Of a DNA stretch of 57,822 nucleotides, positions 1 through 55,526 are shown piece by piece. Made by a program: the position numbers and the translations under genes. Location: positions 1-57,822 of the forward strand of contig CDMY01000524.1 in assembly GCA_001179505.1 (NCBI GenBank). Reading direction: 5' to 3'. The notes under the pieces were generated by a model. The model did no database searches, was not told where the DNA came from, and was given only the letters and a program-made list of their open reading frames with translations. The stretch is from Vitrella brassicaformis CCMP3155 (taxonomy: Eukaryota > Protista > Chromerida). Each line of letters opens with the position of its first letter. The first letter of the stretch is position 1.

Positions 1-43
1 ACACGACCACACAGCACAACGCCCACGGCTGATGTGTCCCGCA

Positions 44-1496
44 GGCGGCTGTCGGTGCATCGCCGTGTCGGTATGGTGTGGGCAGCCGCGTGCTGATGGT
101 GTCGGAGCGGAGAAGGGCCGACAAGTTCCAGTGGGTGGAGGCCGAGGTGTACAAAATGGAGCCGGCCGAGGATGTGCATCCGGGAGGTGGGTGGGATGAA
201 TGAGGAGTTTGAGCCGGTCGTGGTGCCCCACACCACAGCAGCATTCCATCAACTCCCTGACCTATACGCGGTAGGCACACACACACAGGACAGGCAGGGA
301 GAGAGAGGCGGTAGAATGGGAGCCGTGTGGCATCAAGGCGTGCACACATCCTGGTATGTGTGTGACTGTGCGTGTCATCAGGGAGGCCATGGGTTCCATT
401 ACTTCGACCATACTCCCCCGCAGCATCTCGTCCCTCTGCAAACCGTGGATGAGGTAGGCCTCTCATGCAGAGAAGCGGAAGTGACATCTGACGGGTAATG
501 TGCCGTTTTTCCCTGGGTGTGCAGGTTGATGCAGAGCGTTTCTGTGTGGACCCGAGCATCAAGCCGCGCGATGCCAAGGACCCGCTGTCCTTTCTGTCCC
601 TGCCGCCCTCCTTCATGCCCCCCCTCCCCACCGACATCATCACCACCACACTCCTCCCCCTGTGTGGCGGGCGGGAGACCCTCGCACTCAAGCTCAAGAG
701 CACCCTCTGCTGCACCTCCACTGAGGTCGGCAACGCTATCGGCTCCGCTGCGGTGTCGGCCATCGACAGCATCATTGAGACGAACGGCCTCACCTGCGTC
801 ATCGGCTACACCCCGCTGCGCCGGTCGACCGGTGTCCGTCGGCCATTCCGGCTGATCCGGCTGGACTACCTGATGGTGACGGGGGGCGACTGGACGGGCA
901 GCGTGCCGGTGCTGCGATTCGCCAAGAGCTGTGGACGAGTGCAGTCGCTGCCGATCGACCTGACCAATGGCGACCTGCAGGAGGTAGGCAGCAAGGCCAT
1001 CATCGACAGCCGCCCAGAGGCCATCCGCCAGTACAGCCTCTACAGCCACCGACTGAGCCCAGTTCACTACATGCAGCTGACGCGCAGGGCCGACGGGCGG
1101 GAGATGCTGGGTGGGCATGAGGTGACGGTGCACACCGACCAGACGGTGCCGGCTGTGTATCGAGATCGATTCGATGCCGCCGATCCCCCGTGCCGACGTG
1201 AGAGAGGGGAGGTCAAAGCACCACAGAGGAGGCAACTTGACCTGGACGGTGTCTGCCGCTGTGTGTCTGTGTGTCTGCAGACCTTGGTGACGACTTCGGC
1301 AGCTTCAGAGGACGGATCATCCTCAGGTACGCAGCGACACAAATGAGAGAACACAGCACACCAATGTGTCGTGTTGTCTGCCTTTTCGCTCCCTGCTCTT
1401 TCAGGTTGGAATTGGTGTCGTCCCGTTTGGTGTCGAGTCGGTCCTTGGATCCGCCCTCCGCCGAGCACGGTCGCATCGCTGGGCTCATTGACCAGC
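44..1496 (+). pseudogene. Family-1 copy A (alpha-type 5' end), frameshifted, truncated by gap
   Basis: Exons from 44 onward nearly match copy D (9727-11638). At ~171 a single A replaces the GCGGGACGCGGG of copy D (net -11 nt), giving TGA at 201-203. Main exon is in ORF 498-1346. First exon lies upstream of the window. A sequencing error is possible. Confidence 0.6.
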
Positions 1497-1796
1497 NNNN
1501 NNNNNNNNNNNNNNNNNNNNNNNNNNNNNNNNNNNNNNNNNNNNNNNNNNNNNNNNNNNNNNNNNNNNNNNNNNNNNNNNNNNNNNNNNNNNNNNNNNNN
1601 NNNNNNNNNNNNNNNNNNNNNNNNNNNNNNNNNNNNNNNNNNNNNNNNNNNNNNNNNNNNNNNNNNNNNNNNNNNNNNNNNNNNNNNNNNNNNNNNNNNN
1701 NNNNNNNNNNNNNNNNNNNNNNNNNNNNNNNNNNNNNNNNNNNNNNNNNNNNNNNNNNNNNNNNNNNNNNNNNNNNNNNNNNNNNNNNNNNNNNNN
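1497..1796. other. Assembly gap (300 N)
   Basis: Run of exactly 300 N, the same length as the other three gaps, so probably a placeholder. Confidence 0.98.
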
Positions 1797-1862
1797 ACGC
1801 AGCCATCGTCTGTCGACTGATGAATGGCCGTGGCTTCTTCTGCCTGTGTTTGTGTGATTCAG

Positions 1863-3531
1863 CTGGAGGGCCATTCCAAGACCTTCGCGCTGGTCACGCC
1901 AGACGATGACGAGGCCAATCCCGTCGCTGAGAAAACCACAGAGACCACTAGCACAGACAAGAAGGTAGGGCTGCTGCACCTAGTCCCCATTGCCATGACG
2001 GCCAATGTGTGGTGTGATGTGTGTGCAGGTTGAGGTCGATGCGAAGCGCCGCCGTGTTGACGCGCCCGTAGAGTCGTCTGGTGCTGCCCAGCCCGACCTG
2101 CCTGACCTGCCCACTGATGTCATGGGCGGCACCCTGCTGCCCCTCATCAGCGGCCACCGTGACGATCCCGCCACCCTCACCCCACAGCACACGATCGCCC
2201 TCTGCCGCACATCCGAGGCGGTCAGCAGCGCACTCGAGGCCGCCCTGGTCGCCGACATCGACAGCATCATCCGGCGCAACGGACTCACAGGCGTCATCGG
2301 CTACACCCCGCTGCGCCAGTCGAGCCATGGCAGTTGTCTGGTGCGCCGACTGCGATTGATCCGGCTTCACTACCTGATGGTGACGGGCGGCGACTGGCGG
2401 GGCAACGTGCCGGTGCTGCGGCTGGCCAAGAGCTGCCTTCCTCTCGGACGAGTGCAGCTGCCCATCGAGCTGACGGGTGACGACCTGCAGCACGTGGGCA
2501 GCAAAGCCGTCATCGACACCCGCCCAGAGGCCATCCGCCAGTACAGCCTCTACAGCCACCGACTGAGCCCAGTCCACTACATGCAGCTGACGCGCAGGGC
2601 CGACGGGCGGGAGATGCTGGGTGGGCATGAGGTGACGGTGCACACCGACCAGACGGTGCCGGCTGTGTATCGAGATCGATTCGATGCCGCCGATCCCCCG
2701 TGCCGACGTGAGAGAGGGGAGGTCAAAGCACCACAGAGGAGGCAACTTGACCTGGACGGTGTCTGCCGCTGTGTGTCTGTGTGTCTGCAGACCTTGGTGA
2801 CGACTTCGGCAGCTTCAGAGGACGGATCATCCTCAGGTACGCAGCGACACAAATGAGAGAACACAGCACACCAATGTGTCGCGTTGTCTGCCTTTTCGCT
2901 CCCTGCTCTTTCAGGTTGGAATTGGTGTCGTCCCGTTTGGTGTCGAGTCGGTCCTGGGATCCGCCCTCCGCCGAGCACGGTCGCATCGCTGGGCTCATTG
3001 ACCAGCAGCCGCCCGTGTGGGGCTGCCGCACCATCGACTACGGCCACACCGCTGGCTCCTGCCGAGTCGTCATTCTGTGTGGCGACGAGGAGGGCGACGA
3101 CTTCATGGCATGCATCATCATGGCCAAGTACCCTGGTGCGTCGGCACACATCGAGCTCCGCACCACCGAGGCGCCCCAGGGGTGCGGCAGTGGCCCTGCT
3201 GCCTTCCAGCGGGCAGTGGCCATCGCCCGCAACAAGCTGGGCGACGCCATCACGCTCCTCCCAAAGGTCAACGAGGCCATCACAACAGGTACACACGAAT
3301 GATAAGGGGCGGGAGACGCAGATACGCACACACATGGCATGGAGTGCGCCTTCGTGTCGCTCTGAATGTTAGGTGCGTTTGCGTCTTCGGCCACCGAGCG
3401 GCGACCGACCTTCCAGATCTTCTACATAAACATCCCAGGTCAGACACATAGACTCTCACGAACCAGTCTCCACATTGTCTCCATTTACATGCAGGCAGGA
3501 CCAGAACGCTGGACGTCCACCCCAGCGACAC
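1863..3531 (+). CDS. Family-1 copy B (beta-type 5' end) with start of C-terminal ubiquitin-like domain; partial
   Basis: Spliced exons LEGHSKTF..DKK | VEVDAKRRR..DPPCR | [16 protein letters not shown] | LELVSS..NEAITT | [16 protein letters not shown] | [12 protein letters not shown], all GT-AG and in frame. Both ends run into gaps. Confidence 0.75.
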
Positions 3532-3831
3532 NNNNNNNNNNNNNNNNNNNNNNNNNNNNNNNNNNNNNNNNNNNNNNNNNNNNNNNNNNNNNNNNNNNNN
3601 NNNNNNNNNNNNNNNNNNNNNNNNNNNNNNNNNNNNNNNNNNNNNNNNNNNNNNNNNNNNNNNNNNNNNNNNNNNNNNNNNNNNNNNNNNNNNNNNNNNN
3701 NNNNNNNNNNNNNNNNNNNNNNNNNNNNNNNNNNNNNNNNNNNNNNNNNNNNNNNNNNNNNNNNNNNNNNNNNNNNNNNNNNNNNNNNNNNNNNNNNNNN
3801 NNNNNNNNNNNNNNNNNNNNNNNNNNNNNNN
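3532..3831. other. Assembly gap (300 N)
   Basis: Exactly 300 N. Confidence 0.98.
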
Positions 3832-4910
3832 CGACGGGCGGGAGATGCTGGGTGGGCATGAGGTGACGGTGCACACCGACCAGACGGTGCCGGCTGTGTA
3901 TCGAGATCGATTCGATGCCGCCGATCCCCCGTGCCGACGTGAGAGAGGGGAGGTCAAAGCACCACAGAGGAGGCAACTTGACCTGGACGGTGTCTGCCGC
4001 TGTGTGTCTGTGTGTCTGCAGACCTTGGTGACGACTTCGGCAGCTTCAGAGGACGGATCATCCTCAGGTACGCAGCGACACAAATGAGAGAACACAGCAC
4101 ACCAATGTGTCGTGTTGTCTGCCTTTTCGCTCCCTGCTCTTTCAGGTTGGAATTGGTGTCGTCCCGTTTGGTGTCGAGTCGGTCCTTGGATCCGCCCTCC
4201 GCCGAGCACGGTCGCATCGCTGGGCTCATTGACCAGCAGCCGCCCGTGTGGGGCTGCCGCACCATCGACTACGGCCACACCGCTGGCTCCTGCCGAGTCG
4301 TCATTCTGTGTGGCGACGAGGAGGGCGACGACTTCATGGCATGCATCATCATGGCCAAGTACCCTGGTGCGTCGGCACACATCGAGCTCCGCACCACCGA
4401 GGCGCCCCAGGGGTGCGCCAGTGGTCATGCTGCCTTCCACCGGGCAGTGGCCATCGCCCGCAACAAGACGGGCGACGCCATCACGCTACTCCCAAAGGTC
4501 AACGAGGCCATCACAACAGGTACACACGAATGATAAGGGGCGGGAGACGCAGATACGCACACACATGGCATGGAGTGCGCCTTCGTGTCGCTCTGAATGT
4601 TAGGTGCGTTTGCGTCTTCGGCCACCGAGCGGCGACCGACCTTCCAGATCTTCTACATAAACATCCCAGGTCAGACACATAGACTCTCACGAACCAGTCT
4701 CCACATTGTCTCCATTTACATGCAGGCAGGACCAGAACGCTGGACGTCCACCCCAGCGACACCATCGAGAGCGTCAAGGCCAAGATTGAGGAGAAGGAGG
4801 ACATTCACCCCGGCCACCAGCGACTCATCTATGGCTGCAAGCAGCTCGAGAACGGCCGCACCCTGTCGGACTACAACATCCAGAAGGAGAGCACACTGTT
4901 CCTGTATTAG
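3832..4910 (+). CDS. Family-1 3' fragment E ending in a complete ubiquitin-like domain
   Basis: Same exon chain as copy B; introns at 4520-4603 and 4670-4725; ends ...[16 protein letters not shown] (4908-4913). Confidence 0.8.
4642..4910 (+). other. Ubiquitin-like domain lacking LRLRGG
   Basis: Spliced [70 protein letters not shown] matches ubiquitin residues 1-70 at 47/70 positions by manual alignment. Confidence 0.92.
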
Positions 4911-5231
4911 TAGGTATGCATTGGACCGACCTTGGTTGGCTCCCTCCGTTGAATGTTCATTTGAGGTGTGATTGATGTATACGCAGCGTCGCTTTTCAAA
5001 ACTTCTTCTCTTTGCATCTATGTACTTGACGGATTCAATCCGTGTGTTGGTCGCTTCGGTCACATCATCCTTCACCCTTTACTGACCCCAGACACGCCAA
5101 CTATACAGACACACAGATCAACCAGCCAGACAGCCAGGTGCATGTTTGTCATCCGTCATTCACACACACACATACATCATTCACACACATACGCGATGAA
5201 AACTATCAAAGGACTAACTGATGTGGGGGGA

Positions 5232-5531
5232 NNNNNNNNNNNNNNNNNNNNNNNNNNNNNNNNNNNNNNNNNNNNNNNNNNNNNNNNNNNNNNNNNNNNN
5301 NNNNNNNNNNNNNNNNNNNNNNNNNNNNNNNNNNNNNNNNNNNNNNNNNNNNNNNNNNNNNNNNNNNNNNNNNNNNNNNNNNNNNNNNNNNNNNNNNNNN
5401 NNNNNNNNNNNNNNNNNNNNNNNNNNNNNNNNNNNNNNNNNNNNNNNNNNNNNNNNNNNNNNNNNNNNNNNNNNNNNNNNNNNNNNNNNNNNNNNNNNNN
5501 NNNNNNNNNNNNNNNNNNNNNNNNNNNNNNN
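5232..5531. other. Assembly gap (300 N)
   Basis: Exactly 300 N. Confidence 0.98.
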
Positions 5532-7097
5532 CCGAATGCACCGCACCAATCGGCCGCTCCTCTCCCCTCTCCCATCTGCCGTAACAGTGAGTGGACTGCC
5601 CGGACACGCAATGCGTCCAGCACATGCATTGATTTGTTTCCTTATTGGTGTGTTTATCACATGCGTGGTCGGTCAGGTTTTGTGGTGATTGAATCTGTCC
5701 ACCCTAGACGGGCGTCTGCTCCAGTGATGCCACCGGATGAGCCGGTGGGTGAGCCGGGGTTTGGAAGAGGCAGAGAGACACACTCGGGTTCCTTTCTGTT
5801 TGTCCAGTCTTTCTCTCTCAGGAGTGATCGCTGCCGTCATTATATTTTGCGGATCGTTCTCTGCTGTTATGCGGCTGCCTGCTGTTTTCTCTCTCTCCCC
5901 CACCTGTCGCCAGTACGTCCCTCCTTCGAGTGTGCACCTCTCCCTGCGCACACAATGACCCCACCGCCCCACCCCAAACGGCACCACTCTACCCAAGAAC
6001 AGGTGCGCTCACACACACATACACACGCACACACACCTGGATCATGTCTGTTTGTCTTTGTGTGTTGCTGTGTGTGCTGGCCGCAATCTCCTCGCCGTCG
6101 CCCACCCCACCCCACTCGCCCATCTCAATCAGTCGTCGTTGCGCCCCTGACCCTCCCCCGTCTATCCATGGCGCACGTGGTTGTGTTTTCTCAATACTGT
6201 GGATGGACGGGGTCACGGCCAGCTAAGCTGCCACCGCAGACACACACGCACATGGCGTAGTGAGACCGCACACCTTGTGTGTGGCAAACACACACAGACA
6301 AACGGGATGGATGGATGGATGTGACCCCCTCCCCCACACCGCTGTCTGGGCAATGGGAGTCGGTGACCACACCCACGCACCGGTAAGCGGGAATGGAGGG
6401 AGTCTGAGACACAGTGTATGGCCGCAGAGGGGGGCATGCGCAATACAAACCATTTCGACGTGTTGGCATGTGGTTCACTGTGTGTTGTGGTGCAGGCGGG
6501 GAATGCACAGAGGAGGGTGGGCATCGTTGCCTACATTTTATATCTGGTGCTCCCTTGCTTGATTGGTGCGTACTAGTGGTGAACATCAAAGTGTTCTGCA
6601 GAGACCTTGTCAGTCTGATTGACCGCCCAGCTCTCTAGTGAGGACGGGATGGGGGGCGAGCGACTGACGCAGCTGATGTGGAGCTGCTTGTTGTGGTGGT
6701 GCATGTCATTGGTCGGCTGCCAGCGGATGGACAGCGGGATGAGATAAACACAAGACTTTGAGTGATTGCGTCAAGAGAGAATTGAAAAACGGCACACACA
6801 CGTCGGCTACCAATCCATCCATCGACTGCACACACAGTCTGCACTGATCCATCTGTCAACCCATCGCCAACTCAACTCGCCACCCCCACTACCCTCTCGG
6901 TCGGTCAACAGACAGCTACCGTTCCCCACGTCGGTCAGTCGGCTGACGACGCCTCGCAATGCAGACAGACAGATTGATGGTGTGGCGGCTGATGCGGACA
7001 CACCAAACAAAGGAGAGGGAGGGGAGAGCAGACATGCACCAAGATTGCATCGATACCTTCTTCCCTCATGTGTGTCGTGTCATCCGTCCGACCTCCG

Positions 7098-9370
7098 TCA
7101 GATGGCCCAGATGGCCGGCAGCAGCTCCAGGGAGGGGCCGTCCATCTTGTTGCGGGCCTTGGCCACTGCTCGCGGGAAGGCAGCAGGGCCCTCGCCGCCC
7201 CGGGGTAACTCGGTGGTGCGGAGGGAGATGGATGCGAACCCATCATACCACTTGATCATCCTGATTGATGCCACGAAGTCGTCGCCCTCCTCGTCGCCAT
7301 GCAGTACGACGAGTCGGTATAAGGTGCCGATGGTGCTGTAGTCGATGGTGCGGCGGTCCCACACGGGCGGCGGCTGGGCCGTCAGGGCATCGATGCGACC
7401 ACACTCAGCAGAGGGCGGATGCCCGTTGTGAAAACGGTTCGACGACACAGGACTCGACGGATTCCCTGTCATCCTGAAAGAGCAAGGAGCGAAAAGGCAG
7501 ACAACACAACACATTGGTGTGTCGTGTTCTCTCATTTGTGTCGCTGCGCACCTGTCGACGATTAGTCCCCTGAAGCTGCTGTAGTCGTAACCACCGCCTG
7601 CAGACACACAGACACACAGCGGCAGACACCATCCAGGTCAAGTTGCCTCCTCTGTGGTGCTTTGACCTCCCCTCTCTCACGTCGGCACGGGGGATCGGCC
7701 GCATCAAAGCGATTTCGGTACTCAGCCGGCACCGTCTGGTCGGTGTGCACCGTCACCACATACTCGCCCATCATCTCCCGCCTCAGCCGCATGTTGTCAC
7801 CCAGTCGGTGGCTGAAGAGGGCGTACTGGCGGATGGCCTCTGGGCGGCTGTCGATGACGGCTTTGCTGCCCACGTGCTGCAGGTCGTCACCCGTCAGCTC
7901 GACGGGCAGCTGCTGCACTCGTCCGAGAGGAAGGCAGCTCTTGGCCAGCCGCAGCAGCGGCATGTTGCCCCGCCAGTCGCCGCCCGTCACCATCAGGTAG
8001 TGCAGGCGGATCAGTCGGAATGGACGACGGACGCTGGTCGACTGGCGCAGCGGGGTGAAGCCGATGACGCCACTGAGTCCGTTGCGCCGGATGATGCTGT
8101 CGATGTCGGCGACCAGGGCGGCCTCGACTGTGCTGCTGACCGCCTCGGATGTGCGGCAGAGGGCGATCGTGTGCTGTGGGGTGAGGGTGGCGGGATCGTC
8201 ACGGTGGCTGCTGATGAGGGGCAGCAGGGTGCCGCCCATGACATCAGTGGGCAGGTCAGGCAGGTCGGGCTGGGCAGCACCAGACGACTCTACGGGCGCG
8301 TCAACACGGCGGCGCTTCGCATCGACCTCAACCTGCACACACATCACACCACACATTGGCCGTCATGGCAATGGGGACTAGGTGCAGCAGCCCTACCTTC
8401 TTGTTTGTGCTAGTGGTCTCTGTGGTTTTCTCAGCGACGGGATTGGCCTCGTCATCGTCTGGCGTGACCAGCGCGAAGGTCTTGGAATGGCCCTCCAGCT
8501 GAATCACACAAACACAGGCAGAAGAAGCCACGGCCATTCATCAGTCGACAGACGATGGCTGCGTGGACCTCTCTGTGGAAACGTACCAGTGCTACTCCGT
8601 TCAGTCGGCCGAGTGCTCTACAGAACTCTAAAGTGGCGCTCTCGATCATCGCCAGCCGACTCTCAGCAACAGAGCCCTGCACACAGACCACAGACCACTC
8701 GTTTATTGTGCAACGGACGTGTTGACTCACCGACCTTCGCAGCGNNNNNNNNNNNNNNNNNNNNNNNNNNNNNNNNNNNNNNNNNNNNNNNNNNNNNNNN
8801 NNNNNNNNNNNNNNNNNNNNNNNNNNNNNNNNNNNNNNNNNNNNNNNNNNNNNNNNNNNNNNNNNNNNNNNNNNNNNNNNNNNNNNNNNNNNNNNNNNNN
8901 NNNNNNNNNNNNNNNNNNNNNNNNNNNNNNNNNNNNNNNNNNNNNNNNNNNNNNNNNNNNNNNNNNNNNNNNNNNNNNNNNNNNNNNNNNNNNNNNNNNN
9001 NNNNNNNNNNNNNNNNNNNNNNNNNNNNNNNNNNNNNNNNNNNNACAACTGACCCTTCTCTCTCCCACCCTCCCTCCCTCCCTCCCTCCCTTCCTCTCCC
9101 AACCAGTCAGCCCACCAGCAGCAGCAGCTGATGCCGATGTGCTGTTCATAGTGCCACCCGCTGTCCTCACGGCAACCAACACGACGCCTGAAGACCACCG
9201 CACCATGGCGCAGTGAGTGTGCGTCGTGCATCCGTCTGTCATCTCTCGTGCTGTGCTTACCGGTGGAAAGGCAGCGACTGGACGAGCAAGCAAATCAGTC
9301 AAACGATGAGTGAATGAGCCAATCAATGGCGCCGCACCCGTCAACCGTGGGAGCTGCAGACACACACGTG
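7098..9370 (-). CDS. Family-1 copy C (beta-type 5' end), inverted, no ubiquitin domain
   Basis: About 7880-8563 is a near-identical reverse complement of about 1797-2500. Main exon in ORF 7562-8356, micro-exon RGGYDYSSFRGLIVDR, last exon ends LLPAIWAI* at 7098. Upstream exons (GSVAESRL..., LPRLTGAAPL...) flank the gap; the start is uncertain. Confidence 0.7.
8745..9044. other. Assembly gap (300 N)
   Basis: Exactly 300 N. Confidence 0.98.
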
Positions 9371-9726
9371 CAGAGGGAGGTGAAATCATCCCTCAGGCCT
9401 CTCCCTCTCTCAATGTGCGCCATCGGTGTCTGACCGTGTCCTTTCCGCGTGTGTCGATGCCATCCGAACGCTACAAAGGGGCGATCCGCCACACACAGCG
9501 CAGCACAGATGTGATTGGGAAAATGAACCATCGCCGTCGCTTCATCTCAGTGTTTTCGCACCTTCGACGTCGCAAAGGCCACAGGACCGTGCCGCAGCCT
9601 CTAAAGGGCCCGTGCGCCAATTGCGAGCTAATTGCGAGCTTGAAGCCAAAGAGCTCCAGTGAGTGAGGGGGGTGCAGTGAGTGAGTGTAGATCTGGAGTG
9701 AGTGTAGATCTCGTTCTATCGTCACG

Positions 9727-11638
9727 ATGGCATCGTCGAGCTCTTCCGGCCAAATGACTCATCCACAGGTGAGAGCAGAACAGCACACGACCGAACAGCA
9801 CACGACCACACAGCACAACGCCCACGGCTGATGTGTCCCGCAGGCGGCTGTCGGTGCATCGCCGTGTCGGTATCGTGTGGGCAGCCGCGTGCTGATGGTG
9901 TCGGAGCGGAGAAGGGACGACAAGTTCCAGTGGGTGGAGGCCGAGGTGTACAAAATCGAGCCGGCCGAGGGCGGGACGCGGGTGTGCATCCGGGAGGTGG
10001 GTGGGATGAATGAGGAGTTTGAGCCGGTCGTGGTGCCCCACACCACAGCAGCATTCCAACAACTCCCTGACCTATACGCGGTAGGCACGCACACACAGGA
10101 CAGGCAGGGAGAGAGAGGCGGTAGAATGGGAGCCGTGTGGCATCAAGGCGTGCACACATCCTGGTATGTGTGTGACTGTGCGTGTCATCAGGGAGGCCAT
10201 GGATTCCATTACTTCGACCATACTCCCCCGCAGCATCTCATCCCTCTGCAAACCGTGGATGAGGTAGGTCTATCATGCGGAGAAGCGGAAGTGACATCTG
10301 GCGGGTAATGTGCCGTTTTTCCCTGGGTGTTCAGGCTGATGCGGAGCGTTTCTGTGTGGACCCGAGCATCAAGCCGCGCGATGCCGAGGACCCGCTGTCC
10401 CTCCTGTTCCTGCCGCCCTCCTTCATGCCCCCCCTCCCCACCGACATCATCACCACCACACTCCTCCCCCTGTGTGGCGGGCGGGAGACCCTCGCACTCA
10501 AGCTCAAGAGCACCCTCTGCTGCACATCCACTGAGGTCGGCAACGCTATCGGCTCCGCTGCGGTGTCGGCCATCGACAGCATCATCGAGACGAACGGCCT
10601 CACCTGCGTCATCGGCTACACCCCGCTGCGCCGGTCGACCGGTGTCCGTCGGCCATTCCGACTGATCCGGCTGGACTACCTGATGGTGACGGGGGGCGAC
10701 TGGACGGGCAGCGTGCCGGTGCTGCGATTCGCCAAGAGCTGTGGACGAGTGCAGTCGCTGCCGATCGACCTGACCAATGACGACCTGCAGGAGGTAGGCA
10801 GCAAGGCCATCATCGACAGCCGCCCAGAGGCCATCCGCCAGTACGCCCTCTTCAGCCACCGGCTGGGTGACAGGATGCGGCTGAGGCGGGAGATGATGGG
10901 CGAGTATGTGGTGACGGTGCACACACGGCAGACGGTGCCGGCTGAGTACCGAGATCGCTTTGATGCGGCCGATCCCCCGTGCCGATGTGAGAGAGGGGAG
11001 GGCAAAGCACCACAGGAAAGGCAACTTGACATGGATGGTCTCTGCCGCTGTGTGTGTGTGTGCCTGCAGACAATGGTGACGACTTCGGCAGCTTCACAGG
11101 ACTGGTCATCCTTTGGTACGTAGCGACTGAAATGAGAGAACACGACACACCGATGTGTCGTGTTGTCTGCCTTTTCGCTGCTTGCTCTTTCAGGTTGGCC
11201 GTGCTGTCGTCGCGTGAGGTGTCGTATCGGTCCTACAGTCGGTACTCTGCTGGGTATCGTCGCATCGGTGGCCTGATCGACCAGCAGTCGCCCCTGTGGG
11301 GCGGCTGCCGCACCGTCTACGGCTTCTCAGGCCGACTCGTCATACTGTGTGGCGACAGGGAGGGCGACGACTTTGCGGCCTGCATCAGGATGTTCAAGTA
11401 TTCTGGTGGGTCGGCACGCATCATCATGACCGAGTGGCATGATGTGTGGGCATCCATCTCCCTCCACACCACCGAGGCGCCCCAGGGGTGCGGCAGTGGC
11501 CCTGCTGCCTTCCAGCGGGCAGTGGCCATCGCCCGCAACAAGCTGGGCGACGCCATCACACTACTTCCAAAGGTCAACGAGGCCATCACAACAGGTATAC
11601 ACATACGAGAACTCCAGATGAGCCCAAGACAAGAGTGA
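9727..11638 (+). CDS. Family-1 copy D (alpha-type), apparently complete, no ubiquitin exon found
   Basis: Exons 9727-9768, 9844-10080, 10192-10263, 10335-10986, 11070-11115 and 11194 onward join in frame with GT-AG. Sequence after the AG/GT at 11594 is unrelated to the ubiquitin exons; read-through stop at 11636-11638. Confidence 0.75.
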
Positions 11639-12818
11639 GACTGTCCCTTGTTTCATGACGGCAGCTGGCGGGTTGACTGAGATGGAGTCGGACAGCGGCA
11701 CGCACGACATCGGAAGCGGCTGACGTGCAGTGGGGCGGCAACGGCCACTGCACGTGGAGGAGTGAGTGTTGGGGGCCGTGGCGGGCGTGTGCAGCGGTGG
11801 GGTGGCATTGGAGGTAGCTGGGGTGCAGCCGCTGGGCGGCAGCAGAGGGGAGGCAACACACCAGGAGGGGAGGGCGATGCGGCACCCCTCCTCGTAGCCA
11901 ATCGACCCCTCAGTCCATGCTGTCTCTCGTCATGCTGTCTATCGTGCTGTGTACCGAGCCCAGCCTGACTTGCGCTTCTAGCCTTTATGTCAGTGTCCAT
12001 ACGTGTGCGTGTGGGATCCATTCACACGAGTGAGTGACTCATTGGATAGCTGGTGCATGCCTTGGCATCAACGCATACTCATGTCAGGCAACAGTTGACA
12101 TGCGACGTACGTAAAAGGGGCAAAAACGTACAAACCAATACACACATCACACAACTCGACTTTCCCCTCTCCCTGTCCCTCTCCCAACGGTCCTTTCCTT
12201 ATCTTTATCCATCCATCCATCCATCCGGCCAGCAATGGCTACGTGCTGGCAGCCGAATTGCATGTAGGGAGTATCCAGAATGGGACAAAAACAAGTTGGA
12301 GATGTGGGCGGGGGCGGGTGTGTGGTTGTGTGGGTGCCATGTGTCGCTCTCTCCGTCCTTTTCTGCCCTTTCTGTTTCTGTGTGTGTGTGTGTGTGTGTG
12401 TTTGGTGGGGCGGCAAAAGTCAGCTCAAGTGACGCAACACAACGCGGCAGGCAGGCCAATGGGAGAGAGGGGAGAGAGAGAAGCCAGGAGCTAGCTACGG
12501 GAGAGCGAGCGACACTTTCTGCTGGGTTGTCTGGCTGGCACCGACACACCAACCCACGCCCCACACCGCACACACACAAACGTCCCTTGTCCGGCGGTCC
12601 ATCCATCCATTCGGCTGCACAAGACACTGGCACACGAAGCACAAGACATCCCATATCAGTGCACAAACCAAAGGAAAGACACACACGCCACGCCACATCT
12701 GCACACACACCCACGCATACGCACATGCAGATCCGGTCTGTCTCTGAGCCAGCCATCGAGGGTGGGAATCTCTATCTACGAGTGTGTGGGTGTGGGTGTG
12801 GGGTGTGTGTGTGAGCAC

Positions 12819-14784
12819 TCACGCGCCGGGTGCCCAAGGTCGTAAGGCCCTGTTCTTGTCGCCACGGTTGGGGAACTCGTCGCTGTCCTCCATGCTGTCA
12901 CGGTCAAGCTGAGTCGCCTGGCGACGCTTCCGGAACGCCCCTGTCCCGTGTGTGGTGTGGGGGTGCTGGGCGTAGTGGCCCCCGGCAGCCGCAGCAGCCG
13001 CACCGGCGTAGGAGTGGTACGATGGCGCATTTGCGTTGTTGTGGTGGTGCTGGCTGTGTCGGTTGGGCTGCTGGGAGGCCGGTGCGGGTGGTGCAGGAGG
13101 ATGCTGATGGTGGTTGGGCTGCTGCTTGGCCTTGTTCTGCTGTGCGCTCGAGTCGATCTTGACCAGCTCGGCCCGTGGTGGACGACCAGGCGCACCACCG
13201 CCCATCATGCTCTGCTGCTGGTACGGCTTGGCGGCAGCCGCCGGCCGCGGCCGCGGTGGCGGGCGGCCGCAGTCCCCGAACCGCATCTGCCGCTCCTGCA
13301 TCTTCCGGCGCTCCTCCTCCTGCTCCTGCTCCTCCTCCTCCTCCTCCTCAGTCTCGCCACCAGCACCAGCACCAGCACCATCAGTCAGCCCGAACCGCTG
13401 CGCCCTCTCCAATCTCTTCTGCTCCTCACTCCCACCACCACCATCGCCGGGGCGGAGGGGAGGGGGGCGCCTCGAGGCAGCAGCAGGAGGCGGGGCTTGT
13501 TTGGGGAGGTGGAGTGGTGGAACGGGGGGGCTGGTGTGCTGCTGCTGCTGATGCTGGTATGAGAAGGGTATGTGAGGGGCGGCTGGTGTGGGGTCGATGG
13601 GGCCGTATGTGGGCCACTGGTGGCAGTGGGGCGGCTTGTCCAGCTCGATGATGCGCATCCCCTTGGGTTTGGTCTTCAACTCACCGCTGCACAACACACA
13701 CACACAGACACAGACACACATGGGCAGCTCAGCTGTCCTTCGCCTCTGTGTGTGTGTGTGTAGGTTGCCTGCTTACGAGATGGAGTGTGAGTATCCGACA
13801 ATGGCCACTTTTAGCTTGAGCTGGCGGCACTTGTCAACCACCTCAGAAAAGCCAGAGTCACCCGCAAACCTGACACAACCAGTCCAGTCAACAACACATA
13901 CATGCATCAACCTCACATCAGGCCTCTGTTCGTAAGGTTGCTTACAGGACTATCATCTTGATGTCGGACTCTGCGTGTTGGGTGCTGCTCTCGCCCTGAT
14001 CGGCCCGCCGGCGGATGAAGTCGGGCGAGTTCTCTGACACACAGAGGCCAGACCAAACACAGAGAGATCGTCAACCAATGTGACTATGAGCGACAGGTGC
14101 GCCAGCATGCATACCGTAGGCCGTTTCGAGCATCTTCATAGCGATGGAACAGTCAACCCCACGCTGCACCCAACCTGACGCCACACACACACACACACAG
14201 AGGCCGACACTACAGACGTGAACCGATTGCTGCGTTACCGTCGCTATAGCCGACGCCCTGCTTCTTGAAGTCGAATAGCTGTACGTTGATGCGCTGCTGC
14301 CTGAGGAAGCTGTGGAACTCAGTGCGCTTCTGGCGGTCCCCATGACCCCTGCCACGAGTCACCTTCGAGTACCTACGACACCATAGCCAGATGATCGAGG
14401 CTATCTCTGTGCGCGCGTGTGTCATATACCATTTGTCTGGATCTCCGTCGTAGTAGAATGTTTGTGAGTTGTCGACGCCCAGTATGTCCTGCACGTACTT
14501 GAGCACCCGGCAGAACATCTCACCCATCAGGTCAGATCGGTCTTGCTGAGACTCCTTGTAATTCGCCTGAATATTCAATGTTTTTGTCAGTCAGTCAACC
14601 AGACACAAAAAAGAACAATCCATCCATCCATTTGTGTTTCCCTCTGCGTCTATCTGTCACAGCTGGTCGTGATGCACACCAATGCGTCTCGTGTGGCTGG
14701 GCTGTGGAGTTGTTTGGATGTGCACCTGACCTTTATGTAGGCGCCATCTATGACAAACACGGCTTTGGGTCTCCCGGTGGCCAT
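12819..14784 (-). CDS. NYN / LabA-DUF88 (PIN-like) domain protein with low-complexity tail carrying two RxxRFG motifs
   Basis: Spliced motifs MATGRPKAVFVIDGAYIK, FYYDGD, WVQRGVDCSIAMKML, IVLFAGDSGFSEVVDKCRQLKLKVAIVGYSHSISGEL..RIIELD match the NYN/DUF88 pattern in the right order. Last exon is in ORF 12819-13721. Confidence 0.8.
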
Positions 14785-14820
14785 GCTGGTGATGTGACCT
14801 GGGAGGACGTCCGTGGGAGG

Positions 14821-14893
14821 GGCAGCGGTTATCGTCCGGGAGCGGTTTCACGGGGGGAGCGGTTTCACAGAATGTCCGGGAGCGGTTTCACGG
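14821..14893. promoter_or_regulatory. Triple GGGAGCGGTTTCAC repeat in the divergent spacer between the NYN gene and CEP19
   Basis: Three copies at about 14838, 14855 and 14878 plus a degenerate GGCAGCGGTTATC at 14821. A regulatory role is inferred from position only. Confidence 0.5.
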
Positions 14894-37665: not shown

Positions 37666-39814
37666 ATGTCGACTGATGCCGAGGATGGACTTCAGGTGAT
37701 TGCAACTGAATCTCTCGTGCTGGGTGCGGTCCTGTTCTGCACGAGCTCGTCGCTTTTGCTTTTACCAGACATCTGGGTCAGCCAGCAGCAGCAGTGAGGC
37801 GGCACAGCTTCGGGCGGAAAGAGAAAGATGCCTCATCACACAAATCACGGACACGGTAATGCAGTCGGAGAACGCAGAAAAGCCGCTGGGTCAAAGATAT
37901 GGTTTCTGCGTTTGTCTGTGTTTCCAGCCCGGCCTTCTCGGCTGCATTATGGCCTTCCTTCCCCTCCGTTTGCTGGTGCACATCTCTCATACGTGGGAGC
38001 ATGTGGCCCCCTCCCACACGCATCTCACAATCAGTGCGGCGGACAAAGCGGAGAGGTCGTTTTGGCAGCGTGTGCCGATAGATCTCGTCAGCCAGTGGGC
38101 CAGATGCCTCACTCAGCTCACGTCGATCGTCCTGCGTCAGCCCGTCGATGTCTGCCGCTGGTGCTTTGACGTATTCCTCGCCTTTGTCGAGGGCCACGTT
38201 GAGGGCCGACAAGCAGCCAACTTGCAGGGGGGCGCCCTGCAGACCGTCACCATCGACGCGATCCAGTTGACACAGAGGGATATGCGGACCGTCACGCGAA
38301 CAGCTCCCGCTATTTACACCCGCCCAAGCATCAGCCTCCCCAGCCTCACAGCTGTCAGCGGCCTCGCCGACTACCACTTCGAGCTTTGGCATCCTGTGTG
38401 GGACATGCCTTCGTTGGAGCACGTAGAGTTTCAGGACGGCCACTCATGGAGCGGCCTTGCGCTGGCCGGGTTCATCAGCTCGTCCCGCTCTCTGCGGTGC
38501 GTCACAGTGTGGCTATCAGCTCTTGGGTGGTCGGAAGTTTTCCGCGACTTGCCTACGGCAGCTGCAGGGCAGCCAGGGCCACTCAGACGCCTGGAGAGCA
38601 TCCGAGGGATCATGGTCGGTCACAGCCATCATGACGGACAATACCTCGACGAACTTAAGGTGAGCACAGAAAGTAACACTATATTGTTGTGCCTCAAATG
38701 TTGTGCCTTCCAGGCATCCCTCTTGTCGCGGGGCTGCTTGTTGTCCCTCGCGCACTTGGATGTGAGACTCAAAGAGGGTCTTGTCGTCGACTCGACCACC
38801 TTATCTATCATCCACAGCCTTGACACCCTCATTACCACCTGCTGCGTGTCACCGGACGCCGTCACTGTCACCCTTCCGTCGTCCGTGACGAGTGTCGACC
38901 TCACCTTCTTCTACTGCCCCCTGCTCTCTGCCGGGCCCCTGTCGCCCTTCGTCAAGTCGACCCTCACGCAACTCGCCAGCCGTGCGACGGAGGTCGACTG
39001 GGTCATCACTGAGGACAATATCGGCGACGATTTCAGCTCCCCCAGCGAGGCCGCCAAGGCGCTTGCGGCCGACTTGCCATTGGTGGCCAAGGCCACATCT
39101 GTCCGAGTGAGGGTTGGCGGCACAGACGAGCTGGCTGTCGATGCCGAGCCGATCGATCCGCCAGCGATTCTTCAGCACCTGAAGCCCGACGCGTTTCCTC
39201 AGGCGAGGCAGCTGACGGTTGACTCTCGTCTCGGCTGCCGCGTTGGTGGTGTCTTGGGCAGCAAAATGCCAGTGAGGAGCGTTTCGGTGGGGGATGCTGA
39301 CGGCATGTTTGTCGATGAGGGAGAGGTGTGCGAGATGCTGCAATCGATGGGGGCGGAGAAACAGCTGGCCGAAGTGCGGGTGGAGGCCATCTTTGCCTCT
39401 AGTGCCGAGGGGCTCAGCTGGGGGGAGCGGGCTGGCGACATGCCACTCATCGAGAACCTCGTCATCGACAACGCAAAACGTGAGCAGCTCTGCAGTTGAC
39501 TGCACAGACAGGCCAGGCGCGTCCATTGTCGTCTCTCTTTGTTTCTTTCTTTCTCTGTACGAACAGTGCCAAACGACACTGATGAGATCGGTGAGTATGT
39601 GTATACATCCATCGAGTCATCCCTCCAGCTCCGAGGCGTCAAGAGGCTGCGTGTGGGTCTGTCGGACATGAGCAGTGAGGACCGAGCGGCAGTAGAGGAG
39701 GTTCTGACCGAGCGGCAGTGCACCGACGGCGTAGTTGACGGCTATCGACTCAACTGGTGGCGGAGGACGGGCGAGGCGGAAGGAGGTCTGATTGTTGCTG
39801 CTGAGCGCGACTGA
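37666..39814 (+). CDS. Family-2 lineage-specific protein, copy 2
   Basis: 599-aa ORF 37700-39499 with internal introns; AERSFWQRVPIDLVSQWARCLTQL..WCFDVFLAFVEGHVEGR; last exon ends at 39814. Confidence 0.72.
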
Positions 39815-54416: not shown

Positions 54417-54674
54417 TGCGGTTCATAGCTCCCAATGCCTGTCGACCCGGGGCTTAGTGTTAGGCCGGACGACCATCCCCATCCCCTTCTCCCCGAACCG
54501 CTCCCTTCCAACGCTCCCTACCGTTTCACAAGTGTCCTAAGTTACAATCCAGCTCGCAGTTGCTTTCCCCTGGCTGTTGCGTCGCTGTGACAGTATCTAC
54601 AGCGCATCCCAGCTGCCGCAAGTCGCACTGTCTCATCTGCTGATTCTCTCGCCGACTGACCGCACGTGCGCTCC

Positions 54675-55526
54675 ATGATGAGCGAGAAGGAGAGCGAGGA
54701 GCAGAAGAAGGCCGAGAGGGCCAAGCGCTTCGGCATCGAGTCATTCGAGGACAAGAAGGCAAAGAGGGTCGAGAGATTCGGGGCACCTGCCGGCGGCGGT
54801 GGTGGGAGTGAGGAGCAGAAGAGAGTGGAGAGGGCGCAGCGGTTCGCGCTGAGTGGTGGTGGTGCTACTGGTGCTGGTGGCGAGACTGAGGAGGAGAAGC
54901 GCCGGAAGAGGCAGGAGCGGTTCGGCACGTCGCCCACTGGTGCTGGTGGGGACAGCGAGCGTGAGCGGCTCAAGAGGCGTGCCGAGCGGTTCAACCTCTT
55001 CGACGCCGAGCTGGAGAAGGACAAGGCCAAGAAGCGCAAGGAGCGGTTCGGACCGCAAAGCGAGGCTGACAAGATACAGGCGAGGATGGAGCGGTTCGGC
55101 ACCGCCAGTGAAGCAGACAAGGCCAAGAAACGAATGGAGCGCTTCGCAGCCCCCACTCCCGCTGCACCAGCACCAGCATCAGCCCCTGCTGCGGCCCCGG
55201 CGCCCGCCCCTGCTGCCACATCCGATGCCGTCATGAGGGCGGATGAGACCAAAGCCAACGGCGTGGAGCCCGAGGAGAAGGTCGCCGGCCTCCAGGCGAT
55301 GGAGACCGCGCCTGCCGCTGCGGAGGAGACGCCAGCAGCCGAGGAGGGAGAGGAAGAAGAGGAGGAGGCGCCCAAAGCTGCTGCTGCAGCTGCAGCTGCA
55401 GCGGCTGCGCTTAGTGCGGATGCGGGTGCAGCAGTGGGCGGCAAGAAGGTGATCAAGGCGAAGGCCAAGGGGAAGGCCAAAGCCAAGACCAAGAGCAAAG
55501 CCAAGGCCAAGGCCAAGAAGAAGTGA
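54675..55526 (+). CDS. Tho1/MOS11/SARNP C-terminal-like RxxRF-repeat protein without SAP domain
   Basis: Eight RxxRF(G/A/N) motifs in charged helices, an Ala/Pro/Glu linker and a Lys/Ala-rich C-terminal tail; single exon. Confidence 0.72.
   Translation: MMSEKESEEQKKAERAKRFGIESFEDKKAKRVERFGAPAGGGGGSEEQKRVERAQRFALSGGGATGAGGETEEEKRRKRQERFGTSPTGAGGDSERERLKRRAERFNLFDAELEKDKAKKRKERFGPQSEADKIQARMERFGTASEADKAKKRMERFAAPTPAAPAPASAPAAAPAPAPAATSDAVMRADETKANGVEPEEKVAGLQAMETAPAAAEETPAAEEGEEEEEEAPKAAAAAAAAAAALSADAGAAVGGKKVIKAKAKGKAKAKTKSKAKAKAKKK

What the first reader, a model, noticed from the sequence alone, without database searches (positions are those of the whole stretch)
12819..14784. NYN nuclease-like gene has captured UAP56/DDX39-binding-type RxxRFG motifs from a gene 41 kb away
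Minus-strand 13275-13445 (GGGGSEEQKRLERAQRFGL..GAGGETEEE..RRKMQERQMRFG) is nearly identical at the DNA level, including third positions, to 54795-54926 of the Tho1/MOS11-like gene (GGGGSEEQKRVERAQRFAL..GAGGETEEEKRRKRQERFG). The NYN copy adds a poly-Glu expansion. In SARNP/Tho1, RxxRFG motifs bind the mRNA-export helicase DDX39B/UAP56/Sub2. A NYN/PIN-like RNase domain joined to such motifs could couple export-competent mRNPs to nuclear decay. I do not recognise this architecture; the functional link is inference.
Basis: partly seen in the sequence, partly recalled or inferred. Interest (0 to 1): 0.75.

Follow-up and report, generated by a model that had tools for sequence, protein, structure and literature searches.

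The report
NYN nuclease gene with borrowed helicase-binding motifs
In the alga Vitrella brassicaformis, a young copy of an RNA-cutting (NYN) gene has picked up about 130 bases from a neighbouring mRNA-export gene, giving it two textbook docking motifs for the helicase UAP56; whether the cell uses them is untested.

Summary
The window is Vitrella brassicaformis contig CDMY01000524.1. The minus-strand seven-exon gene 12819-14784 encodes a 477-aa protein already in GenBank. Residues 1-205 are a MARF1/VPA0982-type NYN domain. Its last exon holds a block (13451-13275) that matches 54786-54926 of a SAP-less SARNP/MOS11-like gene at 88-92% DNA identity, in the same reading frame. These are the only two copies in the window.

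The block carries two motifs, KRLERAQRFG and KMQERQMRFG. Both fit the published DDX39B/UAP56-interacting motif consensus exactly. The donor gene has eight such motifs.

The closest paralogue (CEM15010.1, dS about 0.16) is homologous only down to 13527 and has no such block. None of the eight detectable relatives among 1.84 billion representative proteins has one either. A recent one-way capture is therefore well supported.

Function is not shown. The block shows no purifying selection (about 2 synonymous against 9 non-synonymous changes). The rest of the tail is orphan low-complexity sequence. The NYN domain has uniquely lost a conserved Asp (GDSDF to GDSGF). RNA evidence is fragmentary.

I class it as a new variant of known kinds, of moderate interest.

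The parts
12819..14784 (-). Seven-exon NYN gene (477 aa; GenBank 'unnamed protein product', Vitrella brassicaformis CCMP3155). Exons: 14784-14731, 14566-14430, 14372-14239, 14174-14115, 14033-13946, 13869-13777, 13686-12819 (stop 12821-12819).
   Evidence: Exon-by-exon translation. It has the same length and sequence as database protein P0001. All six introns are GT..AG. A spliced contig of an RNA-like run joins exons 3-4-5 with no mismatch.
13638..14784 (-). NYN (MARF1/VPA0982-type PIN-like) nuclease domain, residues 1-205. Candidate catalytic Asp residues are D13, D58, D116 and D162. The second Asp of the GDSDF motif is Gly164 in this protein alone.
   Evidence: Pfam PF01936 at 39.4 bits against a cut-off of 24.2. 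Family profile against PDB 2QIP, E=3e-4. AF2 model with pLDDT 85. Foldseek 2QIP E=2.6e-8 and MARF1 5YAA E=1.6e-5. Family alignment.
13527..14800 (-). Stretch homologous at DNA level (about 80-93%) to the closest paralogue gene CEM15010.1 on contig CDMY01000463.1. Homology stops at 13527.
   Evidence: blastn of the gene against L006. dS 0.16, dN 0.052 and dN/dS 0.33 over 237 codons.
12822..13526 (-). Orphan, low-complexity C-terminal tail (P/Q/H/A/E-rich, predicted disordered). It has no relative apart from the captured block.
   Evidence: blastn and tblastn against the window, L006 and L007 found nothing. The word search found only the protein itself. The frame is open for 288 codons against 3 and 6 stops in the other frames, and GC3 is 0.75 as in the NYN exons. 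AF2 pLDDT is below 50 except at 301-320.
13275..13451 (-). Captured block: motif A, a Gly/Ala linker, an expanded poly-Glu run and motif B.
13389..13418 (-). DDX39B-interacting-motif-like motif A, KRLERAQRFG (residues 279-288; R283 and F287 are the invariant positions).
   Evidence: Regex on the translation. Consensus K1xxxR5xxR/K8F9G10 from PMC10508174. Weak Pfam Tho1_MOS11_C hit at 275-288.
13311..13380 (-). Linker with a (GCTGGT)n hexamer run (13358-13380) and a (GAG)n/CAG poly-Glu expansion (13311-13349). Both arose or were homogenised after the copy.
   Evidence: Tandem Repeats Finder. Alignment to the donor.
13275..13304 (-). Motif B, KMQERQMRFG (residues 317-326; R321 and F325). A 9-nt insert shifted its register against the donor motif, yet it still fits the consensus. 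It lies at the C-terminal end of the only predicted helix of the tail (303-324).
54675..55526 (+). Donor gene: single-exon, 283-aa, SAP-less SARNP/Tho1/MOS11-like protein with eight motifs (at 54705, 54753, 54819, 54897, 54966, 55023, 55071 and 55119, each 30 nt).
   Evidence: Pfam Tho1_MOS11_C E=3.4e-13 in 5 stretches, no SAP domain. Annotated identically in GCA_001179505.1 and found in Logan contigs of three runs. Motif list.
54786..54926 (+). Source stretch: donor motifs 3 and 4 with their linker.
14838..14889 (-). Three tandem GTGAAACCGCTCCC elements 50-105 nt upstream of the NYN start codon. The same 10-mer lies once at 54496-54505 (+) upstream of the donor gene. They may belong to the story as a shared cis element.
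   Evidence: The 10-mer occurs 4 times in the window against 0.1 expected. It is absent upstream of the paralogue.

Best explanation
A young, lineage-specific chimeric gene. After a P0009-like NYN gene duplicated (dS about 0.16), this copy lost the ancestral C-terminal part and gained a new disordered tail. A stretch of about 130 nt from the SARNP/MOS11-like gene 41 kb away, in inverted orientation, was then copied in frame into that tail. The most likely route is ectopic gene conversion or microhomology-templated break repair at GGT/GGC-rich sequence; no transposon features are present. The copy brought donor motifs 3 and 4 plus their linker, and later acquired a poly-Glu expansion and a 9-nt insert. 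The protein is therefore a MARF1-type NYN RNase domain followed by two consensus DDX39B/UAP56-interacting motifs separated by a flexible acidic linker. Two motifs are the minimal valency at which Tho1-CTD and MOS11 bridge two helicase molecules on RNA. Inferred mechanism: the tail docks one or two UAP56/Sub2 helicases through R283/F287 and R321/F325. This would either bring the nuclease to UAP56-loaded nuclear RNPs or lend the single-strand-specific nuclease an unwinding partner. Shown here: gene structure, NYN fold, DNA-level copy, direction, relative age, motif match. Inferred: repair mechanism, UAP56 binding, nuclear site of action, RNase activity. My odds are about 0.9 for the capture and about 0.35-0.4 for a used UAP56 link.
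For: Copy and its uniqueness in the window. Strict motif regex: 8 hits in the six-frame translation of the window (2 in this tail, 5 in the donor, 1 out-of-frame chance hit) against 0.53 expected. Consensus, invariant R5/F9, and the helix-end binding mode: PMC10508174. Need for two motifs to stimulate the helicase, and tolerance of flexible linkers: PMC12809590. Paralogue comparison: DNA homology ends at 13527 and no block is found in L006 or L007. The block shows fewer synonymous differences (about 2 in 44 codons) than the paralogue pair (dS 0.16). The NYN part is under moderate constraint, dN/dS 0.33. NYN identity. No relative with such motifs among 8 hits in 1.84e9 representatives. Independent contigs across the junctions, a spliced contig of exons 3-5, and tail contigs in an RNA-like run. 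NYN nucleases docked to RNA-decay hubs by partner-binding regions have precedent in MARF1-DCP1:2 (PMC6294520) and DNE1-DCP1 (bioRxiv 10.1101/2021.10.01.462782), from titles and abstracts.
Against: There is no direct evidence of UAP56 binding, nuclear localisation or RNase activity. Block differences are about 2 synonymous to 9 non-synonymous, so no purifying selection is visible; five of these lie in a hexamer repeat, and the numbers are too small to decide. The Pfam Tho1_MOS11_C score of the tail is below threshold (15-16 bits against 26.8). The rest of the tail is orphan low-complexity sequence. Gly164 replaces an Asp kept in all seven relatives. No full-length spliced transcript is on record; RNA-like contigs do not cover 13256-13339, and contiguity from the NYN exons to the block is not shown by RNA. 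Earlier notes of this scan describe other Vitrella NYN chimeras that are broken or decaying. The whole Vitrella genome could not be searched for further copies.
Confidence: 0.5

Rival explanations
1. Neutral passenger. The block is an accidental templated insertion or gene-conversion tract in a fast-evolving, disordered and functionally irrelevant tail of a redundant NYN paralogue. The motifs still fit the consensus only because the copy is young, and nothing in the cell depends on them.
For: About 2 synonymous against 9 non-synonymous changes in the block. Microsatellite expansion and hexamer homogenisation inside it. The flanking tail is orphan and low-complexity and predicted disordered. 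A conserved Asp is lost in the NYN domain. Transcript evidence is low and patchy, and no full-length transcript ORF is on record, unlike the paralogue, which has MMETSP and JGI transcripts. Vitrella has many NYN fusions, and earlier scan notes report some of them as broken.
Against: Both motifs keep every consensus position. Motif B does so even after a 9-nt insert changed its register, and motif A has Gly10 where the donor has Ala. The 288-codon frame is intact, with coding-like GC3. The NYN part shows dN/dS 0.33. The gene is spliced and transcribed at least in part.
Confidence: 0.38
2. Dispersed repeat. The block is one member of a mobile or multi-copy element scattered over many unrelated Vitrella loci, so its presence in both genes says nothing about a link between them.
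For: The full genome could not be searched. Run contigs hint that short pieces of the tail (13442-13505; variants at 13475 and 12906 at about half depth) also occur in another locus or allele.
Against: There are only two copies in 57.8 kb, and none in the 13 kb of paralogue loci. In a whole-genome-sized contig set (X1), summed depth over the block (26-37) is not above the single-copy flanks (45-62), whereas true microsatellite bins pile up to more than 500. The block is in frame, and its limits coincide with two complete motif units of a tandem-motif gene. It has no terminal repeats or transposon features.
Confidence: 0.07
3. Artefact. A mis-assembly or a wrong gene model joins unrelated sequence to the NYN exons, or the true mRNA ends or splices before the block.
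For: No RNA contig bridges the start of exon 7 to the block. The tail is repetitive.
Against: A 761-nt contig from a different study spans 12874-13634 without any difference, and X1 contigs agree. The exon that holds the block begins with conserved NYN-region codons shared with the paralogue. The open frame runs on to 12819. RNA-like contigs cover 12761-13227.
Confidence: 0.05

Closest known systems
SARNP / Tho1 / MOS11 (Pfam Tho1_MOS11_C, PF18592): tandem DDX39B-interacting motifs (DIMs)
   Same: The tail carries two motifs that fit K1xxxR5xxR/K8F9G10 exactly. They are joined by a flexible linker and are derived by DNA copy from a bona fide member of this family in the same genome. Two motifs are the valency of the yeast Tho1 C-terminal domain.
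   Different: The tail has no SAP domain and only 2 motifs against 8 in the donor. Its Pfam score is below threshold. The motifs sit behind a nuclease domain instead of in an export adaptor. Binding to UAP56 is untested.
MARF1 / VPA0982 / LabA-type NYN endoribonucleases (PF01936), including Arabidopsis DNE1
   Same: It has the same fold, with Asp residues at the ends of beta1, beta2 and beta4 and at the start of helix 3. The design principle of a NYN nuclease plus a region that docks to an RNA-metabolism hub is also shared: MARF1 and DNE1 bind the DCP1 decapping complex.
   Different: There are no LOTUS/OST-HTH, RRM or CCCH RNA-binding domains. The putative partner would be the nuclear export helicase, not the decapping complex. 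The second Asp of GDSDF is replaced by Gly. The sequence is so diverged that only 8 representatives are found by phmmer.
Vitrella paralogues: CEM15010.1 (P0009, NYN plus unknown C-terminal region), CEM27112.1, and the NYN-TLDc genes (P0003, CEM19587.1)
   Same: The seven-exon NYN module is shared, at 89% amino-acid identity to P0009 over 237 codons, as is the post-NYN linker down to PFSYQ(Q)nHTSP.
   Different: Everything downstream of 13527 differs. None of the paralogues has a DIM, and they keep GDSDF or GDKDF.
UAP56-binding-motif (UBM) adaptors ALYREF, UIF, CHTOP, LUZP4
   Same: They also use short linear motifs to attach a protein to DDX39B/UAP56.
   Different: The UBM is a different motif that binds the N-terminal RecA domain, whereas DIMs bind the C-terminal domain (PMC10508174). 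No UBM was looked for or seen here.

Membership tests
NYN domain (PF01936; MARF1/VPA0982-type PIN-like nucleases) | Profile match above the curated threshold | tested here: met
   P0001 scores 39.4 bits against a gathering score of 24.2, E=1.1e-9. A family profile hits PDB 2QIP at E=3.2e-4.
NYN domain (PF01936; MARF1/VPA0982-type PIN-like nucleases) | Three-layer PIN-like fold similar to solved NYN domains | tested here: met
   AF2 model of residues 1-205: pLDDT 85, pTM 0.84. Foldseek: 2QIP E=2.6e-8 (TM by target 0.73), mouse MARF1 NYN 5YAA E=1.6e-5 (0.72), human 6FDL. ESM Atlas structural row TM 0.75 to a NYN cluster.
NYN domain (PF01936; MARF1/VPA0982-type PIN-like nucleases) | Four catalytic Asp at the C-terminal ends of beta1, beta2 and beta4 and the N-terminus of helix alpha3 (MARF1 D178, D215, D272, D246; PMC6217404) | tested here: inconclusive
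   D13 (end of strand 7-13), D58 (end of strand 50-59), D116 (start of helix 115-129) and D162 (after strand 153-159) sit at the expected places. The 2QIP alignment pairs D116 and D162 with its Asp residues. No residue-level superposition was made. The further conserved Asp of GDSDF, kept in all 7 relatives, is Gly164 here.
NYN domain (PF01936; MARF1/VPA0982-type PIN-like nucleases) | Metal-dependent RNase activity | not testable with these tools
   This needs an enzyme assay.
SARNP / Tho1 / MOS11 (PF18592) | Tandem DIMs with invariant R5 and F9, and R/K8 (K1xxxR5xxR/K8F9G10) | tested here: met
   The tail has two, KRLERAQRFG (279-288) and KMQERQMRFG (317-326). The donor has eight. Consensus from PMC10508174. 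Chance expectation is 0.53 per window.
SARNP / Tho1 / MOS11 (PF18592) | Pfam Tho1_MOS11_C above the gathering score | tested here: not met
   The NYN protein scores 15.4-16.2 bits against 26.8. The donor gene scores 49.7 bits and passes. The NYN protein is therefore a carrier of a fragment, not a family member.
SARNP / Tho1 / MOS11 (PF18592) | N-terminal SAP domain (SARNP and Tho1) | tested here: not met
   No SAP hit in P0001 or in the 283-aa donor. Only about 260 nt separate the donor ATG from the neighbouring gene.
SARNP / Tho1 / MOS11 (PF18592) | Binding of DDX39B/UAP56/Sub2 C-terminal RecA domain, 1 helicase per motif | not testable with these tools
   No multimer prediction is on hand and the Vitrella UAP56 sequence was not retrievable. 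This needs AF-Multimer/AF3 and a pull-down.
Vitrella NYN-TLDc fusion family | TLDc domain behind the NYN domain | tested here: not met
   P0003 and P0007/P0012 have TLD (PF07534). P0001 has none.

The most novel reading that the evidence does not exclude
The two captured motifs are functional. The protein would then be the first DIM-bearing protein outside the SARNP/Tho1/MOS11 family: a nuclear 'mini-degradosome' in which a NYN endonuclease recruits and dimerises the export helicase UAP56 on RNA, born within one lineage by a sub-exon copy of about 130 nt. A shared upstream element (AACCGCTCCC) may co-regulate it with the SARNP-like donor.
Probability: 0.2. Interest if true: 0.7.

Novelty: new variant of a known kind. 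Interest (0 to 1): 0.45.

Why it matters
If the motifs are used, this gene would show a short helicase-docking motif being moved between genes by a copy of about 130 nt and rewiring an RNase onto the mRNA-export machinery. That is a direct nuclease-to-UAP56 link, which the papers I could search describe for no organism. It would also give a small natural two-motif construct for testing the helicase-bridging model proposed for Tho1 and MOS11. If the motifs are not used, the gene is still a clean, datable example of how disordered protein tails collect functional-looking motifs by ectopic repair. It is also a caution against reading function from motif-plus-domain architecture alone.

Tried and rejected
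1. Pfam on single exon translations gave nothing because the exons are too short. The database protein P0001 was used instead.
2. Word search with the 283-aa donor protein returned no hit, not even itself. The candidate list was swamped by low-complexity words, so this is uninformative.
3. Word search with the last exon found only P0001, under the same caveat.
4. phmmer of the NYN domain against PDB gave only a spurious hit. The 8-sequence profile was needed.
5. AF2 of the full protein with 3 sequences gave pLDDT 40. It is unusable except for one helix at 303-324.
6. Exact look-up of the MMETSP paralogue P0002 found nothing on record. This was solved through its cluster member P0009.
7. A 21-mer scan of JGI metagenome contigs returned two bacterial contigs that share the 21-mer by chance. 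Vitrella transcripts are evidently not in that collection, so it did not test dispersal.
8. A degenerate homologue of the block in the paralogue's tail was suggested by MAFFT but rejected: BLASTP E is above 2 and there is no DNA match.
9. The DIM-like hit at 38037-38066 was rejected as chance, because it is out of frame with the long ORF there.
10. A selection test on the block was attempted, but there are too few changes to decide.
11. No tool here could search the whole Vitrella genome, fetch its UAP56 or predict a complex.
Full report
**Source and gene model.** The window is contig CDMY01000524.1 of Vitrella brassicaformis CCMP3155 (GCA_001179505.1), a chromerid alga. On the minus strand I read seven exons: 14784-14731, 14566-14430, 14372-14239, 14174-14115, 14033-13946, 13869-13777 and 13686-12819. 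All six introns are GT..AG. The model gives 477 codons. The public protein P0001, found by searching the last exon by reference, has the same length and sequence.

Exons were translated and searched one by one, and wherever a full-length protein was needed I used the database's own record P0001. In scripts, exons were treated one at a time. The one exception is, where four in-frame exon pieces were concatenated inside the script to count GC by codon position; that string was neither saved, printed nor sent to any search.

**The observation.** The repeat finder lists one long inverted pair between the two genes, 13338-13451 and 54786-54899 (114 nt, 89%). blastn of 13260-13470 against the whole window finds only itself and 54795-54918 (124 nt, 88%, E=4e-39). 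Weaker hits fall on the other RFG repeats of the same donor gene.

Codon by codon, 34 codons share 94 of 102 nt and 8 further codons share 22 of 24 nt, followed by the Phe-Gly codons. The NYN copy has three later modifications:
- a GAG/CAG run of about 36 nt (tandem repeat 13311-13349);
- a homogenised GCTGGT hexamer run (13358-13380);
- a 9-nt insert.

An independent run from another study holds a 761-nt contig that covers 12874-13634 without a single difference. Both junctions of the block are therefore confirmed outside the reference assembly.

**The two genes.** Residues 1-205 of P0001 are a NYN domain. The evidence is:
- Pfam PF01936 at 39.4 bits against a threshold of 24.2;
- an eight-sequence family profile that hits VPA0982 (PDB 2QIP) at E=3e-4;
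- an AF2 model built on that alignment with pLDDT 85, whose best structural matches are 2QIP (E=2.6e-8) and the mouse and human MARF1 NYN domains;
- agreement from the ESM Atlas.

The four aspartates shown to be essential in MARF1 lie at the ends of beta1, beta2 and beta4 and at the start of helix 3 (PMC6217404). They have counterparts at the same structural places: D13, D58, D116 and D162. One further conserved Asp, the second one of GDSDF, is present in all seven relatives. In this protein alone it is Gly164, and the DNA there is confirmed by run contigs. Activity may therefore be intact or weakened.

The donor gene (54675-55526, plus strand) is a single-exon 283-aa protein. It matches Pfam Tho1_MOS11_C at E=3.4e-13 in five stretches and has no SAP domain. 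By regex it has eight motifs of the type [KR]xxxRxx[RK]F[GAN].

**The motifs.** The crystal-structure paper on Tho1/DDX39B/RNA defines the DDX39B-interacting motif (DIM) as K1xxxR5xxR/K8F9G10. R5 and F9 are invariant in 37 motifs, and the motif sits at the C-terminal end of a helix that contacts the helicase C-terminal domain (PMC10508174).

Both motifs of the NYN tail fit every specified position: KRLERAQRFG (279-288) and KMQERQMRFG (317-326). Motif A even has Gly10 where the donor has Ala. Motif B keeps the consensus although the 9-nt insert shifted its register. It ends the only helix that AF2 predicts in the tail (303-324).

In the six-frame translation of the whole window the strict pattern occurs eight times, against 0.53 expected. 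Two hits are in this tail, five are in the donor and one is an out-of-frame chance hit.

A 2026 study shows that Tho1-CTD and MOS11 stimulate Sub2/UAP56 by bridging two helicase molecules, that at least two intact motifs are needed, and that flexible, longer linkers are tolerated or even better (PMC12809590). The captured piece is exactly a two-motif unit with a flexible linker.

**Direction and age.** An exhaustive phmmer search of 1.84 billion representative proteins with the NYN domain returned only eight proteins at E<=0.001. Six are Vitrella paralogues and two are from euglenids, Rhabdomonas costata and Euglena longa. Their C-terminal parts are TLDc, RRM, CCCH or unknown, and none has a DIM.

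The closest paralogue is CEM15010.1 (P0009, contig CDMY01000463.1). Its gene aligns to this gene at the DNA level, introns included, from 14800 down to 13527 and no further. Neither its locus nor its spliced transcript has any match to the block.

Over 237 aligned codons, dS is 0.16, dN is 0.052 and dN/dS is 0.33. The NYN part has therefore been under moderate constraint since a fairly recent duplication. The block differs from the donor at only about two synonymous sites in 44 codons. The copy, or the last conversion between the two genes, is thus younger than the paralogue split.

The donor's eight regularly spaced motifs add to this picture. Together the data support a one-way capture from the SARNP-like gene into the NYN gene. 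The remaining tail (13526-12822) has no relative anywhere I could look. It is open for 288 codons, has the same GC3 (0.75) as the NYN exons and is predicted disordered.

The mechanism of transfer is inferred. There are no transposon hallmarks, the two loci lie 41 kb apart in inverted orientation on one contig, and the 5' limit lies in GGT/GGC-rich sequence shared by both. This fits ectopic gene conversion or microhomology-templated repair.

**Expression.** All runs are held only as contigs, so depth is not usable. One RNA-like run has a 230-nt contig that joins exons 3, 4 and 5 of this gene with no mismatch. The contig is distinguishable from the paralogue by two SNPs and a 7-codon insert. The same run has contigs over 12761-13227 in the tail and 3' end.

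It also has a 1021-nt contig that matches 13391-13439 with the single difference expected of the donor transcript, so the donor is expressed. No RNA contig covers 13256-13339, none bridges the NYN exons to the block, and no assembly on record encodes the full 477-aa product apart from the genome annotation. However, the exon that holds the block also encodes the conserved end of the NYN region. The block can therefore be missing from the mRNA only through an additional, unannotated splice.

**What speaks against function.** The differences between the two copies are about 2 synonymous against 9 non-synonymous. Five of these lie in a hexamer repeat and may stem from one slippage or conversion event. 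The count is too small to decide, but it gives no sign of purifying selection.

The tail scores below the Pfam threshold for Tho1_MOS11_C. A conserved NYN aspartate is lost. Earlier notes of this scan, which I did not verify beyond finding the NYN-TLDc paralogues myself, describe a large and unstable set of NYN fusions in Vitrella, some of them broken. A neutral passenger insertion is therefore a serious rival, at about 0.38.

I could not test the 'dispersed repeat' refutation on the whole genome. The indirect evidence against it is:
- there are only two copies in the window;
- there are none in 13 kb of paralogue loci;
- there is no pile-up of contigs over the block in a genome-sized contig set, whereas microsatellite bins do pile up.

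**Verdict.** The architecture of a NYN domain plus two DIMs was not found in any other detectable relative or in the searchable literature: only SARNP-family papers mention DIMs, and no paper pairs Vitrella with NYN.

The most likely mechanism, if the tail is used, is docking of one or two UAP56 helicases to a MARF1-type RNase, either to reach UAP56-loaded nuclear RNPs or to gain an unwinding partner. This is analogous to the way MARF1 and DNE1 dock to the decapping complex. That step is inference, and I put it at about 0.35-0.4.

I class this as a new variant of known kinds, with interest of 0.45.

Noticed in passing
14838-14889 (-) and 54496-54505 (+): The 10-mer AACCGCTCCC occurs only four times in the window, against 0.1 expected. 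Three are tandem GTGAAACCGCTCCC copies just upstream of the NYN start codon, and one lies about 170 nt upstream of the SARNP-like donor gene. All are in the sense orientation of their gene. The motif is absent upstream of the NYN paralogue (L006). It may be a shared cis-regulatory element.
   Followed up: partly
54675-55526 (+): The SARNP/MOS11-like protein has eight consensus DDX39B-interacting motifs, more than the two to six listed for representative species in PMC10508174. It has no SAP domain, and an Ala/Lys-rich C-terminus follows the motifs.
   Followed up: partly
13442-13505, 13475, 12906 (run contigs laid on the window): Variants 13475 A>C (Ser to Ala) and 12906 A>C (synonymous) appear at about half depth in DNA runs. 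An RNA-like run has a 699-nt contig that shares only 13442-13505 (2 mismatches) with the tail. This suggests an allele or another locus that shares short pieces of the tail. It is unresolved.
   Followed up: no
14240-14312 (run contigs): Three DNA runs hold a variant contig that leaves the window sequence at 14240 and continues with 31 nt encoding TTGEKSQG. That is the exon-3 extension of paralogue CEM15010.1, so paralogue reads are laid on this gene at 95% likeness.
   Followed up: yes
P0001 relatives: This NYN subfamily is extremely narrow. Only 8 representatives were found in 1.84 billion proteins, from Vitrella (at least 6 paralogues with different C-terminal partners) and from the euglenids Rhabdomonas costata and Euglena longa. 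No Chromera or apicomplexan member was detected. The distribution is odd and patchy.
   Followed up: partly
14373-14429 (-): Intron 2 is 57 nt long, in frame and free of stop codons. If retained it would add 19 residues inside the NYN domain. The paralogue's spliced transcript lacks the equivalent stretch.
   Followed up: no
1-11650: A dense set of direct and inverted repeats (up to 542 nt at 97%, 300 nt at 100%) points to a tandemly and invertedly duplicated gene family at the left end of the contig. An earlier scan note at 3373-4913 mentions a ubiquitin-derived domain there.
   Followed up: no
L006 4600-5604 / P0009 residues 400-618: The closest paralogue carries a C-terminal region of about 220 residues that looks globular, has no Pfam match and has no counterpart in this gene. 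It is an uncharacterised partner domain of the NYN module.
   Followed up: no
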